Shown one piece after another: positions 9,713 through 14,394 of a stretch of DNA of 64,000 bases. Origin of the DNA: Callorhinchus milii (taxonomy: Eukaryota); assembly GCF_018977255.1 (NCBI RefSeq), contig NW_024704762.1, forward strand, positions 8,680,001 through 8,744,000. Reading direction: 5' to 3'. The position numbers and the translations under genes are program-made. Position 1 is the stretch's first letter; every line of letters begins with the position of its first letter. The notes under the pieces were generated by a model. The model ran no database searches. It saw only the letters and a list, made by a program, of their open reading frames with translations, and had not been told where the DNA came from.

Positions 9713-10708
9713 ATGGAACTGAATAATGGTGAACTATTGCCTGTGCAGGCAGAAGATGAGGGAACTGCATCAGAGCTCCACAATGGAGGACTGATGGAAC
9801 CGGATGCTGAAGGGGCAGAGGTTGGGCAGGGTGATGAGGAGGCGGGGTTGGATAACGAGGAAGCGGAGCTGGTCAATGGGGATGTGGAGGTGGAGCTGGC
9901 TGATGAAGGGCTGGAGGTGGTGTCGGACAGTGAAGTGGTGGAGGTAGAAGTGGGGTTAGGCGATGAGGATGCAGGACCCAGTGATGAGGAGGTGATGGCA
10001 GAGCTAGGCAATGAGGTTGGTGATGCAGCTGAGCTGGGCGACGAGAGGTTGGAGGTGGGGCCAGATGGTGAAGAGGCAGAGCCGGGGCCAGATGGTGAAG
10101 GGGCAGAGCCGGGGGCAGATGGTGAAGGGGCAGAGCCGGGACCAGATGATGAAGGGGCAGAGCCAGTGCTGGAGGATGAAGTGGCAGACGTGGGGCCAGA
10201 TGAGGAGGAGGTGGAGCCAGTGCCAGATGGTGAGCGGGCGGAGCCAGTGCCAGACGATGAAGGGACGGTGGCAAAGGTGAAGCCAGATGTTTCGGGGGAG
10301 GAGCCAGTGATGGATGATGAGGGGGCTCTGATGGAGGTGGGGACAGATGCTGAGGGGGTGGAGCCAGTGCCAGAGGAAGAGGGCATGATGATTGATGATG
10401 AGGGGGCGTTGGTGGAGTCGGGGACAAGTGGGGAGGAGGTAGGGCTAATTCCAAAGGATGAGGGGATGGCAGAGGAGGTGGGGCCGGAGGATGAAGGGTT
10501 AGTGACAGAGGCGGGGCCGGAGGGTGAGGGGGCAGTGACAGAGGTGGGGCAGGAGGATGAAGGGGCAGGGCCAGAGGGTGAGGGGGTAGTGACAAAGGCG
10601 GGGCCCAAGAATGAGGGGGCGGGGCCGGAGGAGGAAGTAATTGCAGAAACTATTCTTCGATCAACCCGTGCGGACAGCCTGAATGTCAACTCTGTCGCCC
10701 AGCCACAG
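9713..10708 (+). CDS. SMN-like gene, first coding exon: 332-aa Glu/Gly/Asp/Val-rich repeat region
   Basis: Acceptor ttttag at 9691-9696, donor cag|gtatgt at 10709, open frame (ORF track 9698..10816). Confidence 0.75.
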
Positions 10709-13700
10709 GTATGTCAATCGACGTCAATCTCACAGCGAGTGAGTCCTCTGAGCCAGGACTCGCTTATGCGTTTTGTCCGTCTTCAGATCGCAACCTCAGT
10801 GTTGCAGAATCTCTAAAGACCCGAGATTTCAAATGAAGTCCACAGCCACCGCATGTGAGCAAGGGATTCCCTGAGCCGAGACCATAAGAAACTGTAATAT
10901 TCAACCAAATTAAATGGAGGTTAAATTTCTCTGCCCAAAGGGAGCGCTTGTTTATCTCGGCTGCCTCAATACCCAATGTGTTTCCTTTCCTCCGTCCAGT
11001 GGGCATGTTGGGAAGTGGGTGATCGCTGCCGGGCCAGGTGGACCGAAGACGGCATAATCTACGCAGCCACCATCCAGTCCATAAACATCGGCAAACAGAC
11101 CTGTACCGTCCTCTACACCGATTACGGCAACAGGGAGGAGCAGACCCTGTCGGAGCTGCTGCCCGAGGAGAGCGAGAGCTTCGGAGAACGGGTGAGAGAC
11201 GTAACTTCAGTCCCTGGTCCCTGACGTCAGTGTGTGACCACAAGAGGTTTCTGTGTATAGAGCGCCCTTCACAAAGGGGTAGCATCTCGGACCATGTTTA
11301 TAATAATCCTTGCATTTGATAAAGCGCCTTATTACGTCATTGAGACTGTAAAGAGGATTGACTGTATTTTGACTGTGATGTCAGTGGGTGACTGACTACA
11401 AGACGTGGACATAAGTAACTGCGACTGTGCCGTTGGGAGAATTTGCAGTGGGCAGTGACCATTGAATAAAACTCAGTGTTTTTGTTGTCCTTCAGCAGCA
11501 AAATACAGAGTCAAGCCAATTTACAGTTAATTCTGTGAAGCACTTGGAGACGTCTCAATGACTTGATAAGGCGCTGAGGAACATTGGCAACAAATCAGCT
11601 TGCTTCACTCTTGACACCCGGATGCATTGTTTTTGAGAATAATATGAGGGGGAAGTGATATGTGTAGCACTTTGCTAGTCACTTTGGCGTAATGTTTACT
11701 GTTCCGCCCCCCCCCCCAGAGCGATTTGTCCCTCTTTTGTTTAGTTCCTGTGTTCCTCATGCAAATTCATTTCCTTTCCTCCATCCAGTGGGAATGTTGG
11801 GAAGTGGGCGATCGCTGCCGGGCCAGGTGGTCTGAAGACGGCATCATCTACAGTGCCACCATCCAGTCCATAAACATCGGCAAACAGACCTGCACCGTCC
11901 TCTATACCGGATATGGCAACAGGGAGGAGCAGAGGCTCTCGGAGCTGCTGCCCGAGGAGATCGAGAACTTCGGAGAACAGGTGAGAGGCGTAACTCGGTT
12001 AAAAAATTGGGCGAATGAGAACGCCTGCGGTTGATGTGGTGTCACAGACCAAGAGTGACCTGGTGAGCCAGAGATCCAGGTAGTTAATAATAATAATAAT
12101 AATAAAGGTCCTCTGTGAGGTGCTGACTGACCTGTTGTGGGTTCCAGAATTTTGGAAGAGTTTGGGAATGAAGCCAATGCAACTCATCAGCCAGAGCTCG
12201 GTAGGGAACTCGGATGAGGATGGAGAAGAAAATGATCATTAATGGCTTGAATTGGCTGCCGCGTTTTGCTCACAGAACACACAGTCAATCCACTTTACAA
12301 TGTATTCTGTGAACTACTTAGAGACGTCACAACGACATGATATCAATTGCACTATATCAATTGAAATTATTATTACTATAATTGACTCTTATGACTCAAT
12401 GGAACTGAGACCTTTTTCCTTCCTCCATTCAGTGGGAATGTTGGGAAGTTGGTGATCGCTGCCGGGCCAGGTGGTCCGAAGACGGCATCATCTACGCCGC
12501 CACCATCCAGTCTATAAACATCGGCAAACAGACCTGCACCGTCCTGTACCATGGGTACGGCAACCGTGAGGAGCAGAGCCTGTCAGAGCTGCTGCCCGAG
12601 GAGAGTGAGAGTCTCGAGGAACAGGTGAGAGACGTAACTCGGTCCCTGACGTCAGAGGGTGACTTGTCCACTGGAGGTAAAAGTAACTGCCTTTGCAATC
12701 CAAAGCTCCACCCGGGTTGGGTGGCCCTGGCTGGACAAGCAGTGGGAAAGCTTGCCAGACAACCATATCAATGGCAAACTATGTGGTTTTAGTGTTTAGA
12801 CTTCAGCAGTTACCCCAACGCACACTCTGAGCTCCCCAAGTGTTGCCTCTTGCCAACCTGCACCTAATACTTTCTGGAGTTAGGTCCGCAGGATGCATCC
12901 CTCCTGGCAGAGAGAGAGAGAGCATATTCCATTCCAACAATCTATCTCTGGAAGGGGTGGGAGGGAGAGATCACAACTGCTCTATTTCAAGGAGTGAGTT
13001 TGTCTGGCTGGAGTTGTGTGGAAGGGTCAGGGAGGGCTCTCATTCTGCCCATATAGTCTATGATCCCTTGCTTCTATCTGCAGGTGGTGGAGAGAGGCTC
13101 ATTGACAGGAGACTGGGAGAATACCTCCCCTATGTGCAGAGCAGACATCTTCAAAGAGAAACGCTGGCACCATCACTTGCAAGAGTCTCGCTACCATGGA
13201 CATCAGCCACTCACACCCCCCGAGACCCCCACCCACAATCACACCTACACCCACAACCAAACCATCACACAGCCACCCACACCCCCCCTGATGCCTCGAT
13301 ACAGCAATGTCCAGGTTTGTGCCAAAATGGGGTTTAAATTTGTTGTAGTGTAAATGGGAAGTGAAATAAGTTGCAATGAGACAATTGGGAGTGACGTGAG
13401 GTTTAATCCAATCCAACTATAAACTCGAGTGGAATGTCAATTGCATTAATTGGTGGGATTCTGTCCCTGCCTTGTTTTATTTTTCTTGTTGTTTTGAGTT
13501 TTCACTGGGATGAATTAACGACAACAACAACAGATTACAGTTGCATAGCACCTTTCATGTCAGAAAAAATGTCCCAAGGTAGTGGACAGTTAGGGATTTG
13601 GACCCGAGCTGGGGGGTGGGATCAGGAGGGTGGTGGGCAGGGAGAGTAGGTAATTATCTAATTTAATAGATCTCAATCTCTTTTGCCCCTCCCTCCCCCA

Positions 13701-14394
13701 CAGACCTCTCCTCTTCCTCCTCCAGCTCACCTATTCAGCCCAGACCTCAGTGAAGATGGTGCCCTGATGAGCCTGCTGATAGCTTGGTACATAAGTGGCT
13801 ATCACACTGGATACTATCTGGTATGTGACCGTTTAGTTTATATTCTGACCTTCCCAGGCTTTAACCCAATGATGCAAATTCTGGACTGTCATCTTATTTT
13901 AGCTCCTCAAGGTATCGGATAACTCGCTTCTTGCGGGAAGAGGGATATCCTTGCTGTAACTATTAGGTTTTCCACTAACTTTGATTCTCCTCAATTTCCC
14001 TCTTGCTTTACAAAACTACATCTGAAGCAATGTGTGACTCAATCCATTACAATCCATTTGGGATTACAAGTTCCATTACATATTTGGGACATGATTTGTC
14101 ATGCAACTGCTAGGATTTCGCTTAGAAATTCTTATGCATCTACGCTACTCACTGTAATAATTTACATCTTTCACAAATGGAAATGTTCGCTCCTTTGTGA
14201 AACTTTCCGTTTTTCTCCTCTGAAGTTATTGTTGTTTAGTGATGTTTCAGAATGTTTAGCCGAGACCTCCACCCGACAAAGAATGTTGATTTATATCTGA
14301 AATCAATCTTCTTGTCTTTAAGGGTTTGAAACAAGGCCGGACTGAAGCAGCCATGAACCCAGAGATGCGGAGACCCAGATGGCCTATTCAGTGA
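9713..14394 (+). CDS. SMN-family paralogue: acidic repeat N-terminus, three tandem Tudor domains, Pro-rich region and YG box (about 663 aa)
   Basis: Seven coding exons, all joined in phase 0 with GT-AG sites and no stops: 9713-10708, 11000-11191, 11789-11980, 12433-12624, 13084-13314, 13704-13820, 14323-14394 (TGA). Tudor exons match SMN exon 3, [17 protein letters not shown] matches the SMN exon 6 YG box, and GLKQGR matches the start of SMN exon 7. The ATG at 9713 (acgATGg) is inferred. Confidence 0.85.
10057..10640 (+). repeat. Coding tandem repeat, 27-33 nt units (EPGPDGEGA / [11 protein letters not shown])
   Basis: Repeated gagccggggccagatggtgaaggggca units degenerating into gtgacagaggcggggccggagggtgagggggca units. 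Confidence 0.8.
11000..11191 (+). CDS. SMN-like Tudor exon 1
   Basis: 192 nt, phase 0-0; [64 protein letters not shown]. Confidence 0.9.
11789..11980 (+). CDS. SMN-like Tudor exon 2
   Basis: 192 nt, phase 0-0; [64 protein letters not shown]. Confidence 0.9.
12433..12624 (+). CDS. SMN-like Tudor exon 3
   Basis: 192 nt, phase 0-0; [64 protein letters not shown]. Not shown in the ORF track. Confidence 0.9.
13084..13314 (+). CDS. SMN-like His/Thr/Pro-rich linker exon
   Basis: ctgcag|gtg acceptor, cag|gtttgt donor, 231 nt open in phase 0 (VVERGSL...[15 protein letters not shown]). Confidence 0.65.
13704..13820 (+). CDS. SMN-like YG-box exon (SMN exon 6 equivalent)
   Basis: [39 protein letters not shown]; donor gtatgt at 13821. 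Confidence 0.92.
14323..14394 (+). CDS. SMN-like terminal coding exon (SMN exon 7 equivalent)
   Basis: tctttaag|ggt acceptor; [23 protein letters not shown]. Confidence 0.85.
   Translation, partial: GLKQGRTEAAMNPEMRRPRWPIQ

What the first reader, a model, noticed from the sequence alone, without database searches (positions are those of the whole stretch)
9713..14394. Remodelled SMN paralogue with three tandem Tudor domains and an intact YG box
Seen: seven phase-0 exons give an uninterrupted protein of about 663 aa (acidic repeats, Tudor x3, Pro-rich region, YG box, short tail). Established: canonical SMN has one Tudor domain, an N-terminal Gemin2-binding motif (DDSDIWDDTALIKAY) and a YG box, and is essentially single-copy in most vertebrates; SMNDC1 and TDRD3 lack the YG box. 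The intron positions before the Tudor W, after GYY(M/L) and before G(F/L) match SMN exons 3, 6 and 7. Inference: this is a second SMN-family gene encoding a multivalent, oligomerising methyl-arginine reader uncoupled from Gemin2, possibly a condensate scaffold for Cajal bodies or germ granules. I do not know this architecture from other vertebrates.
Basis: partly seen in the sequence, partly recalled or inferred. Interest (0 to 1): 0.92.

Follow-up and report, generated by a model that had tools for sequence, protein, structure and literature searches.

The report
Three-Tudor SMN paralogue in elephant shark
The elephant shark has a second, expressed relative of the spinal-muscular-atrophy protein SMN that carries three methyl-arginine-reading modules instead of one and lacks the part that docks onto Gemin2, and two- and three-module versions are also predicted in many other non-mammalian vertebrates.

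Summary
Seven phase-0 exons at 9713-14394 (+) give 663 aa. The product is identical to the public prediction XP_007897061.1, "uncharacterized protein LOC103182025 [Callorhinchus milii]". It has a 332-aa acidic repeat tract, three 64-aa SMN-type Tudor exons, a linker, a YG box and a short tail.

All six splice junctions appear as GT..AG joints in contigs of RNA-like runs. They are absent from a DNA-like run. The three Tudor exons differ at dN/dS 0.12-0.29, while their intron flanks have decayed.

No Gemin2-binding domain is found in the protein or in any frame of the 64-kb window. A canonical SMN1 with that domain is annotated elsewhere in the species.

The architecture is not unique. Two- or three-Tudor SMN-like proteins with a YG box are predicted in coelacanth, lungfish, amphibians, turtles, crocodilians, geckos, sturgeons, bowfin and teleosts.

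Distinctive here are the missing Gemin2-binding domain and the acidic repeat N-terminus.

The origin is unresolved: ancient ohnologue or chimaera-specific duplicate. I rate it a new variant of a known kind, of moderate interest.

The parts
9697..9712 (+). Probable 5' untranslated start of the first coding exon, directly after an acceptor AG at 9695-9696
   Evidence: The sequence has a pyrimidine tract plus AG at 9695-9696. The X1 contig that carries E1 ends at 9697/9698 (record 1). An upstream non-coding exon is inferred, not shown.
9713..10708 (+). E1: start codon and 332-aa acidic tandem-repeat tract
   Evidence: 110 D+E against 9 K+R, pI 4.05. Tandem repeats of period 27, 33, 54, 60 and 81 nt. 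No Pfam family. AlphaFold2 block-mean pLDDT 36-55 across this exon and no secondary structure before residue 332. An RNA-like contig covers it and joins it to E2.
11000..11191 (+). E2: first SMN-type Tudor exon (64 aa)
   Evidence: Pfam SMN_Tudor E 1.2e-19. PDB 1mhn E 1.8e-19. Joints E1-E2 and E2-E3 in X1. Block-mean pLDDT 95-96 in the core.
11789..11980 (+). E3: second Tudor exon (64 aa)
   Evidence: Pfam E 3.2e-21. Joint E3-E4 in X1, X2 and X3. dN/dS against E2 0.29 and against E4 0.12.
12433..12624 (+). E4: third Tudor exon (64 aa)
   Evidence: Pfam E 4.3e-22. X3 record 14 runs E3-E4-E5. dN/dS against E2 0.19.
13084..13314 (+). E5: 77-aa Pro/His/Thr-rich linker
   Evidence: no family. pLDDT under 50. 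Joints E4-E5 and E5-E6.
13704..13820 (+). E6: YG-box exon (39 aa) with three YxxG motifs ([12 protein letters not shown])
   Evidence: Pfam SMN_YG-box E 1.8e-12, 61.5 bits in the whole protein. Helix 618-651 in the model.
14323..14394 (+). E7: 23-aa basic tail and stop codon
   Evidence: Joint E6-E7 in X1 and X2. The tail aligns with GLKQGR...EA of other SMN proteins.
14395..14479 (+). 3' untranslated region, at least this far
   Evidence: The spliced contigs X1 record 4 and X2 record 8 run on to 14472 and 14479.

Best explanation
This is a real, transcribed and selectively maintained paralogue of SMN in the elephant shark (LOC103182025). It is separate from the species' canonical SMN1. Three tandem copies of the exon-sized SMN Tudor module sit between a roughly 100-charge acidic disordered N-terminus and an intact YG box. 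Inferred mechanism: the YG helix zippers the protein into oligomers, either with itself or with SMN1, whose YG box is almost the same. Each chain then offers three dimethyl-arginine cages, so the oligomer is a high-avidity reader of symmetrically dimethylated RG tails such as those of Sm/LSm-type clients. It has no Gemin2-binding helix, so it cannot by itself nucleate the Gemin2-centred snRNP assembly machine. The acidic tract probably keeps it soluble or engages basic RG-rich clients. It belongs to, or parallels, a largely undescribed set of multi-Tudor SMN-like genes of non-mammalian jawed vertebrates. Its position beside MAP1-, FCHO- and SUGP-family genes suggests an old whole-genome-duplication partner of SMN1. 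Shown here: gene structure, splicing, domain content, absence of the Gemin2-binding domain, purifying selection on the Tudor copies, and the existence of a separate SMN1. Inferred: oligomerisation, methyl-arginine binding, the role of the acidic tract, and the ohnologue origin.
For: Exon model and identity with XP_007897061.1. All six predicted junctions appear as GT..AG joints in contigs of X1, X2 or X3 and none in the DNA-like run X4, whose contigs instead run from each Tudor exon into its own intron. Three SMN_Tudor stretches plus a YG box in the whole protein. The residues aligned to the human SMN cage (W, Y, Y, Y, N; the numbering is recalled) are kept in all three copies. Between Tudor exons dN/dS is 0.29, 0.19 and 0.12 with dS 0.25-0.56, and Fisher p is 0.007, 5e-4 and 1e-6. 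Flanking introns are only about 50-58% identical over 120 nt. The repeat unit is 226 nt in 3 copies, the other two 91% and 88% identical to the first. No Gemin2-binding domain: Pfam finds nothing in E1 at E<=1. A separate canonical SMN1 exists in C. milii. AlphaFold2 gives three confident barrels (block-mean pLDDT 95-97 in their cores), a YG helix, and low confidence elsewhere. An in-frame 21-nt length variant lies in the acidic repeat in X1. Multi-Tudor relatives occur in many vertebrates. Neighbours are SUGP, MAP1 and FCHO family genes.
Against: No binding, oligomerisation or localisation data exist, so function is inferred from domains alone. The runs X1-X3 are RNA only by the tool's guess, and the contigs give no strand, level or tissue. 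No single contig spans E2-E3-E4, so a molecule with all three Tudors is inferred from pairwise junctions. 32 further joints were not shown, so skipped-exon isoforms are not excluded. No orthologue was found in any other cartilaginous fish. Cross-species constraint on the whole gene is therefore untested, and the acidic tract could be evolving freely. Trees place the gene on a long branch (0.63) in a polytomy, and AU tests reject neither a grouping with the multi-Tudor family nor one with C. milii SMN1. Which MAP1, FCHO or SUGP paralogue each neighbour is was not resolved. The paralogon argument rests on human map positions that I recall.
Confidence: 0.7

Rival explanations
1. Origin rival: the gene is a chimaera-specific (or cartilaginous-fish-specific) duplicate of SMN1. 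After duplication it diverged fast, lost its N-terminal exons and multiplied its Tudor exon. On this reading it evolved independently of the multi-Tudor SMN-like genes of bony vertebrates.
For: No orthologue was found in sharks or rays. The YG box and tail are closer in wording to canonical SMN1 than to the bony-vertebrate multi-Tudor group. The Tudor motif QS(I/V)N..KQ.TC is shared with cartilaginous-fish SMN1. The AU test does not reject a clade with C. milii SMN1 (p 0.148) or with cartilaginous-fish SMN1 (p 0.154). Tudor-exon gains happened repeatedly in other lineages.
Against: The free tree puts it outside the canonical clade, which holds C. milii SMN1 with 96% SH-aLRT support. Forcing it next to C. 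milii SMN1 costs 9.0 log-likelihood units, and next to cartilaginous-fish SMN1 8.5 units. Tudor identity to C. milii SMN1 is only 55-62%. It sits next to MAP1- and FCHO-family genes, and paralogues of these are neighbours of human SMN1 (recalled). The shared motifs also occur in Latimeria's first Tudor, so they may be ancestral.
Confidence: 0.3
2. Function rival: the protein works mainly inside mixed oligomers with canonical SMN1. It would add extra Tudor valency and an acidic tail to the SMN complex, or dilute its Gemin2 sites, rather than acting as a Gemin2-independent machine.
For: The YG core is [22 protein letters not shown] here and [22 protein letters not shown] in C. milii SMN1. All three YxxG motifs are kept. 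Both genes exist in the species.
Against: Co-expression, co-oligomerisation and stoichiometry are all unknown. The Pfam YG score is lower than that of SMN1 (61.5 against 109.6 bits).
Confidence: 0.25
3. A transcribed but functionless, decaying duplicate.
For: It is unnamed, no orthologue was found, and it has a long branch. The repeat tract is length-variable.
Against: The 663-codon frame is intact over seven exons with canonical splice sites. dN/dS among the Tudor copies is 0.12-0.29 with decayed intron flanks. The cage and YxxG residues are kept. The length variant is in frame.
Confidence: 0.05
4. It is the species' ordinary SMN1, with an unannotated upstream Gemin2-binding exon and duplicated exon 3.
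For: An acceptor site 16 nt before the ATG suggests an upstream exon.
Against: No Gemin2-binding-like piece occurs in any frame of the 64-kb window. The gene upstream is a SURP/G-patch gene ending at about 5.9 kb. The only in-frame ATG seen in the candidate upstream exon is followed by a stop after ten codons (read by eye). Canonical SMN1 proteins of C. milii are separate records and are not encoded in this window.
Confidence: 0.02
5. The three Tudor exons are an assembly artefact of one exon.
For: The copies are 86-90% identical and share a 32-nt identical run. One X2 contig looks like an E4/E3 chimera.
Against: Contigs bridge E2 to E3 and E3 to E4 with copy-specific letters. X3 record 14 runs E3-E4-E5. 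Contigs of the DNA-like run X4 link each copy to a different intron. The copies differ at 19-26 of 192 positions.
Confidence: 0.02

Closest known systems
Canonical SMN / SMN1 (including C. milii SMN1, P0283 and P0294)
   Same: SMN-type Tudor fold, with best PDB hits to the human SMN Tudor. YG box with three YxxG motifs and a GLKQGR tail. Exon-sized Tudor module.
   Different: Three Tudors instead of one. No Gemin2-binding domain. A 332-aa acidic repeat N-terminus. A Pro/His/Thr linker without long proline runs. A different locus. It lies outside the canonical clade in the free tree.
Predicted multi-Tudor 'SMN-like' proteins of bony vertebrates. Examples: Latimeria XP_006002379.1 and isoform X1, Microcaecilia isoform X2, Xenopus LOC100144954, turtles, crocodilians, geckos, sturgeon and paddlefish, Amia, and teleosts such as Sardina, Coregonus and Centroberyx
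   Same: Tandem SMN-type Tudor units of about one exon length followed by a YG box. They coexist with a canonical SMN in the same species, for example Acipenser, Polyodon, Microcaecilia, Xenopus, Sphaerodactylus and Crocodylus. Three Tudors occur in Latimeria X1 and Microcaecilia X2.
   Different: Most keep an N-terminal Gemin2-binding domain by Pfam or by my profile. Most have two Tudors. None shows the acidic repeat tract (E1 matched only P0002 among the 150 proteins). I found no paper on them (search listings only).
SMNDC1 (SPF30) and TDRD3
   Same: The same Tudor subclass, and they read dimethyl-arginine (established knowledge). PDB hits at E 1.4e-9 and 2e-9.
   Different: They lack a YG box. 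The match is ten orders of magnitude weaker than to SMN. They are not oligomerised by a YG zipper.
Germline multi-Tudor TDRD proteins (TDRD1, TDRD6, fly Tudor)
   Same: Multivalent arrays of methyl-arginine readers. Many multi-Tudor proteins were hit, with up to 15 stretches.
   Different: Those use extended Tudor units and have no YG box. In one search the YG exon matched none of the large multi-Tudor hits.

Membership tests
SMN family (Pfam SMN_Tudor + SMN_YG-box) | SMN-type Tudor domain | tested here: met
   PF06003 is found three times: E 1.2e-19 to 4.3e-22 per exon, and 202.9 bits with 3 stretches in P0002. The best PDB hit is the human SMN Tudor.
SMN family (Pfam SMN_Tudor + SMN_YG-box) | Aromatic cage residues for dimethyl-arginine (W, Y, Y, Y plus N; the human numbering is recalled) | tested here: met
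   The residues aligned to the human SMN Tudor are identical in the alignment for E2. The same letters are present in E3 and E4. Binding itself was not tested.
SMN family (Pfam SMN_Tudor + SMN_YG-box) | C-terminal YG box with three YxxG motifs | tested here: met
   PF20635 E 1.8e-12. The motif reads [13 protein letters not shown]. The model has a helix at 618-651.
SMN family (Pfam SMN_Tudor + SMN_YG-box) | N-terminal Gemin2-binding domain (PF20636) | tested here: not met
   No Pfam hit in E1 at E<=1 and none in P0002. The session profile gives no hit at E<=1000. No hit in 2949 six-frame pieces of the window; the best is E 6.7.
SMN family (Pfam SMN_Tudor + SMN_YG-box) | Self-oligomerisation and a role in snRNP assembly | not testable with these tools
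   This needs biochemistry.
Multi-Tudor SMN-like paralogues of bony vertebrates | Two or more tandem SMN-type Tudors followed by a YG box, alongside a canonical SMN in the same genome | tested here: met
Multi-Tudor SMN-like paralogues of bony vertebrates | Phylogenetic grouping with that clade | tested here: inconclusive
   The tree is a polytomy of the canonical clade (96), the multi-Tudor clade (90) and this gene. AU p is 0.57 for the grouping, and rival groupings are not rejected.
Multi-Tudor SMN-like paralogues of bony vertebrates | Shared chromosomal neighbourhood | not testable with these tools
Only this window's neighbours are known.
SMNDC1 / TDRD3 | A single Tudor without a YG box, plus their own flanking domains | tested here: not met
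   A YG box is present. The PDB match to SMN is far stronger than to either.

The most novel reading that the evidence does not exclude
Jawed vertebrates ancestrally had two SMN genes. SMN1 sits beside MAP1B/FCHO2. A second, Tudor-multiplying 'SMN-like' ohnologue sits beside MAP1S/FCHO1. The second gene survives in chimaera, coelacanth, lungfish, amphibians, turtles, crocodilians, geckos, sturgeons, bowfin and many teleosts, was lost in mammals and birds, and has never been described. In the elephant shark it has gone furthest, shedding the Gemin2-binding helix and gaining a roughly 100-charge acidic tail. That would make it a Gemin2-independent, oligomeric, trivalent dimethyl-arginine reader.
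Probability: 0.4. Interest if true: 0.7.

Novelty: new variant of a known kind. Interest (0 to 1): 0.55.

Why it matters
SMN is studied almost entirely as a single-Tudor, Gemin2-bound, essentially single-copy protein, because of spinal muscular atrophy. A naturally occurring SMN relative that keeps the oligomerising YG box and triples the methyl-arginine reader, but drops Gemin2 binding, is a natural separation-of-function variant. It could show what the Tudor and YG parts do on their own, such as client capture, condensate building or non-snRNP roles. The wider observation may matter more than this one gene: many model and non-model vertebrates, Xenopus included, carry a second multi-Tudor SMN-like gene that the literature searched here does not mention. 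It bears on how SMN function is interpreted in frog and fish models, and it gives a testable case of ohnologue retention and loss.

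Tried and rejected
Hand-set exon coordinates were off by one to three bases and were replaced.

A first Gemin2-binding profile was seeded with the first 70 residues of the public C. milii SMN1 model P0283. It gave spurious window hits at its positions 1-21. Those residues of P0283 are translated SINE sequence. I rebuilt the profile without them. The negative result for the paralogue and the window stands.

MAFFT placed the last 30 residues of E1 under the Gemin2-binding helix of other proteins. 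I considered a vestigial helix. The profile finds nothing and the model shows no helix and low confidence there, so I dropped it.

The Tudor-only tree (129 rows, 60 columns, FastTree) and the Tudor+YG tree (47 rows, 112 columns, IQ-TREE quick, LG+G4) do not place the gene. From the 76 named proteins I left out the 23 unnamed ones and six near-duplicate or truncated rows: Latimeria_X1, Pelusios_L, Vombatus_SMN, AlligatorSin_L, Caretta_L and XenopusTrop_L. The AU tests reject nothing.

The search for orthologues in other cartilaginous fishes found none (12 hits among 8000 scored candidates of 365-1160 aa; top 150 of 868). Shorter or longer relatives, and any hidden under a 50% cluster representative, are not excluded.

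The Atlas look-ups did not resolve which MAP1 paralogue the neighbour is and gave nothing useful for the SURP-gene N-terminus. PDB holds only FCHO2 for the matched parts, so FCHO1 against FCHO2 is open.

Literature searches found nothing on this gene or on multi-Tudor SMN paralogues or the paralogon. I saw only listings and abstract starts and opened no paper. Supplements were closed and were not asked for. Subscription journals are not covered.

Earlier notes of this scan on other windows gave nothing further.

Full report
WHAT IS THERE. On the + strand, 9713-14394 holds seven exons. All are phase 0, with AG/GT at every internal boundary. They are E1 9713-10708, E2 11000-11191, E3 11789-11980, E4 12433-12624, E5 13084-13314, E6 13704-13820 and E7 14323-14394. 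Together they make 1992 nt, or 663 codons plus TGA (my first hand coordinates were slightly off).

I searched the exons one by one. E2, E3 and E4 each match Pfam SMN_Tudor (E 1.2e-19, 3.2e-21, 4.3e-22). E6 matches SMN_YG-box (E 1.8e-12). E1, E5 and E7 match nothing at E<=1. Among solved structures E2 is closest to the human SMN Tudor domain (1mhn, E 1.8e-19), and far less close to SMNDC1 (1.4e-9) or TDRD3 (2e-9). The residues aligned with the human dimethyl-arginine cage are identical in that alignment, and the same letters stand in E3 and E4 (the residue numbering is recalled). A six-frame scan of the whole window (2949 pieces) finds exactly three Tudor pieces and one YG exon with its tail.

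WHOSE GENE IT IS. I searched 1.84 billion cluster representatives with the E4 exon alone. The search returned a 663-aa protein with three matched stretches (P0002). All seven exon translations occur in it consecutively. It is XP_007897061.1, "uncharacterized protein LOC103182025 [Callorhinchus milii]". The window is therefore elephant shark, and the gene is already predicted by NCBI, but it is unnamed. I left out the step of joining my own model. From here on I used the public record by its id.

IS IT EXPRESSED AND SPLICED AS PREDICTED? Twelve runs were listed and seven hold part of the stretch. None is on record as RNA, and the RNA label of X1-X3 is the tool's guess. Contigs of X1, X2, X3 and X4 were laid on 9200-15100. 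They show GT..AG joints at all six predicted junctions:
- E1-E2 in X1
- E2-E3 in X1
- E3-E4 in X1, X2 and X3
- E4-E5 in X1 and X3
- E5-E6 in X1 and X2
- E6-E7 in X1 and X2

X3 record 14 runs E3-E4-E5, and X1 record 4 runs E4-E5-E6-E7. X4 behaves as DNA. It shows none of these joints, and its contigs run from each Tudor exon into a different intron. The joined forms are therefore spliced transcripts, and the three exons are separate places in the genome.

The limits are these. Contigs give no strand, level or tissue. No single contig spans E2-E3-E4. 32 further joints were not shown, so exon-skipping isoforms are not excluded, though none is among the 15 listed.

X1 also carries an in-frame 21-nt deletion at 10434, inside the repeat tract. 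The X1 contig with E1 stops at 9697/9698, directly after an acceptor-like AG (9695-9696) that lies 16 nt before the ATG. That suggests an upstream non-coding exon, but this is inferred.

ARE THE THREE TUDOR COPIES MAINTAINED? The repeat unit is 226 nt. The second and third copies are 91% and 88% identical to the first. Between exons there are 19-26 differences in 192 nt. dS is 0.25-0.56 and dN about 0.07, giving dN/dS of 0.29, 0.19 and 0.12. Synonymous changes are in excess by Fisher's test (p 0.007, 5e-4, 1e-6; the counts are small). Over 120 nt the intron flanks are only about 50-58% identical. The triplication is therefore old, and each copy has been kept. Exon-limited gene conversion could contribute to this pattern.

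THE REST OF THE PROTEIN. E1 has 110 D+E and 9 K+R in 332 residues, with pI 4.05. It is built of tandem repeats of period 27, 33, 54, 60 and 81 nt, all multiples of three. An AlphaFold2 model, built on an alignment of 53 family members (A2), has mean pLDDT 59.6. It gives three barrels (block-mean pLDDT 95-97 in their cores), a helix at 618-651 over the YG box (block means 65-83), and low confidence with no secondary structure across E1 before residue 332 and for E5. This is a beads-on-a-string picture.

NO GEMIN2-BINDING DOMAIN, AND A SEPARATE SMN1. Pfam finds no SMN_G2-BD in E1 or in P0002. It gives no hit in P0002 even at E<=1000, and its best score among 2949 six-frame pieces of the window is E 6.7. 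An earlier profile was contaminated by SINE-derived residues and was discarded.

The space upstream is short. A SURP/G-patch gene ends near 5.9 kb. Canonical SMN1 exists in C. milii as separate records: P0283 (UniRef A0A4W3HRM6) and P0294 (NCBI "survival motor neuron protein 1 isoform X3"). Each has a Gemin2-binding domain, one Tudor and a YG box. They match this window only at the paralogue's own Tudor exons (55-62% identity) and YG exon (75-78%). This is therefore not SMN1 with a missed exon.

THE ARCHITECTURE IS NOT UNIQUE. Of 264 session proteins with a YG box, 202 have one SMN-type Tudor, 59 have two and 3 have three (my own iterated profiles).

Pfam confirms two Tudors plus a YG box in the following proteins. 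All have a Gemin2-binding domain except Protopterus, for which Pfam gave no such hit:
- Latimeria X2
- Crocodylus
- Chelydra
- Xenopus LOC100144954
- Geotrypetes
- Protopterus
- Amia

Pfam confirms three Tudors plus both other domains in Latimeria X1 and Microcaecilia X2.

Names from the sources extend the set to other turtles, alligator and gharial, geckos, sturgeons and paddlefish, Scleropages, Sardina, Denticeps, Coregonus, Synaphobranchus, Centroberyx and gobies. Several of these species also have a canonical one-Tudor SMN. Some ray-finned members fall below Pfam's Gemin2-binding threshold but are picked up weakly by my profile.

In the Tudor-domain tree the extra copies of Latimeria and of caecilians arise within their own lineages. 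The three shark copies form one clade (98) at 92% identity. The phase-0 Tudor exon has thus been multiplied repeatedly.

What remains special to the shark gene is the complete absence of the Gemin2-binding domain together with the acidic repeat N-terminus. E1 matched only P0002 among the 150 proteins.

I found no paper on any of this. I saw listings and abstract starts only, and the library is open-access only.

ORIGIN. A Tudor+YG tree (47 rows, 112 columns) gives three lineages. The canonical clade has 96% support and includes C. milii SMN1. The bony-vertebrate multi-Tudor clade has 90% support. The shark gene stands alone on a long branch of 0.63. AU tests reject none of these groupings:
- with the multi-Tudor clade, p 0.57
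- with the canonical clade, p 0.57
- with cartilaginous-fish SMN1, 8.5 log-likelihood units worse, p 0.154
- with C. milii SMN1, 9.0 units worse, p 0.148

No orthologue turned up in sharks or rays.

The neighbourhood gives independent, circumstantial evidence. Upstream is a SURP/G-patch gene (Pfam Surp; PDB SUGP1 G-patch 2e-14; splicing factor 4 SURP). Downstream on the same strand is a MAP1-family gene (MAPB1_N; the Atlas is ambiguous between 1A, 1S and 1B). After that comes an FCHO-family gene (another first-reader note calls it FCHO1).

From memory, not from any call: human MAP1S, FCHO1, SUGP1 and SUGP2 lie together on 19p13.11. Their paralogues MAP1B and FCHO2 lie on 5q13.2 close to SMN1. 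The two regions are classic whole-genome-duplication partners. On that basis I favour an old ohnologue of SMN1 (about 0.55-0.6) over a chimaera-specific duplicate (about 0.3).

HOW IT MOST LIKELY WORKS. The domains are shown here. What they do is inferred from established SMN biochemistry. YG boxes form glycine-zipper oligomers, and SMN Tudor domains bind symmetric dimethyl-arginine in RG tails. The protein should therefore oligomerise through the YG helix. It could do so alone or with SMN1, whose YG core differs at only two positions in the 22-residue stretch printed. Each chain would present three cages, giving a high-avidity reader.

Without a Gemin2-binding helix it cannot itself recruit Gemin2. 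It is then either a Gemin2-independent reader or scaffold, or a modifier of SMN1 oligomers. The acidic tract may keep the oligomer soluble or attract basic, arginine-rich clients. This last point is the weakest step.

VERDICT. The gene is real, expressed and constrained, and already sits in the databases as an uncharacterised locus. It is a new variant of the SMN family and not a new kind of system. Its reading of function is reasonable but untested. Its claim that the architecture is unique is wrong. The more interesting by-product is the broad, apparently undescribed, multi-Tudor SMN-like gene set of non-mammalian vertebrates.

Noticed in passing
window 4405-4700, 11499-11568, 12273-12342, 16072-16263, 30873-31098, 40743-41057, 61602-61877 and others: A tRNA-Ala-headed SINE is scattered through the window. 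A 24-nt core gives 10 matches at up to 3 mismatches against 0 expected. ARAGORN calls three tRNA-Ala-like heads. Copies lie in introns 2 and 3 of the SMN-like gene (family D2). These copies explain the very high contig depths there.
   Followed up: partly
protein P0283 (UniRef A0A4W3HRM6, C. milii SMN1), residues 1-21: The public model of canonical C. milii SMN1 starts with about 21 residues that are translated SINE sequence. They are 100% identical to SINE copies in this window. This is probably an annotation artefact at its 5' end.
   Followed up: partly
window 10434 and 10044, 10280, 10298: The X1 contig lacks 21 nt in frame inside the acidic repeat and differs at single letters in E1. X4 shares one of these differences. 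The repeat tract varies in length between individuals.
   Followed up: no
window 11786-11977 (X2 record 5): One contig reads like E3 but carries E4's letter at all six differences that the table lists for it, and then joins E4. E3 and E4 share an identical 32-nt run. A contig chimera is therefore likely, but a gene-conversion allele or a fourth copy is not excluded.
   Followed up: partly
window 8560-8880 and 9695-9697: A CpG-rich stretch is followed by a donor-like AAG|GTAACA near 8877. There is a strong acceptor at 9695-9696 just before the ATG, and the X1 transcript contig ends exactly there. This is a candidate non-coding first exon and promoter. It is not shown.
   Followed up: no
window 18800-21070: A 64% G+C low-complexity stretch has long artificial ORFs of GGGFLRVGG-like repeats. 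It runs into two N gaps at 20281-20582 and 20589-21067, upstream of the MAP1-family exons. The gaps were left untouched.
   Followed up: no
window 1-5943; 23781-36000; 58332-63732: Neighbouring genes on the + strand are a SURP/G-patch gene, a MAP1-family gene with a 1252-codon exon at 31591-35349 and an FCHO-family gene. Which paralogue each one is was not resolved.
   Followed up: partly
proteins P0166 (Latimeria X1), P0168 (Microcaecilia X2), P0132 (Nematostella): Three-Tudor SMN isoforms are predicted in coelacanth and in a caecilian, and the extra copies arose within those lineages. Nematostella SMN1 has a second, very divergent Tudor-like stretch by my profile, but Pfam counts only one.
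   Followed up: partly
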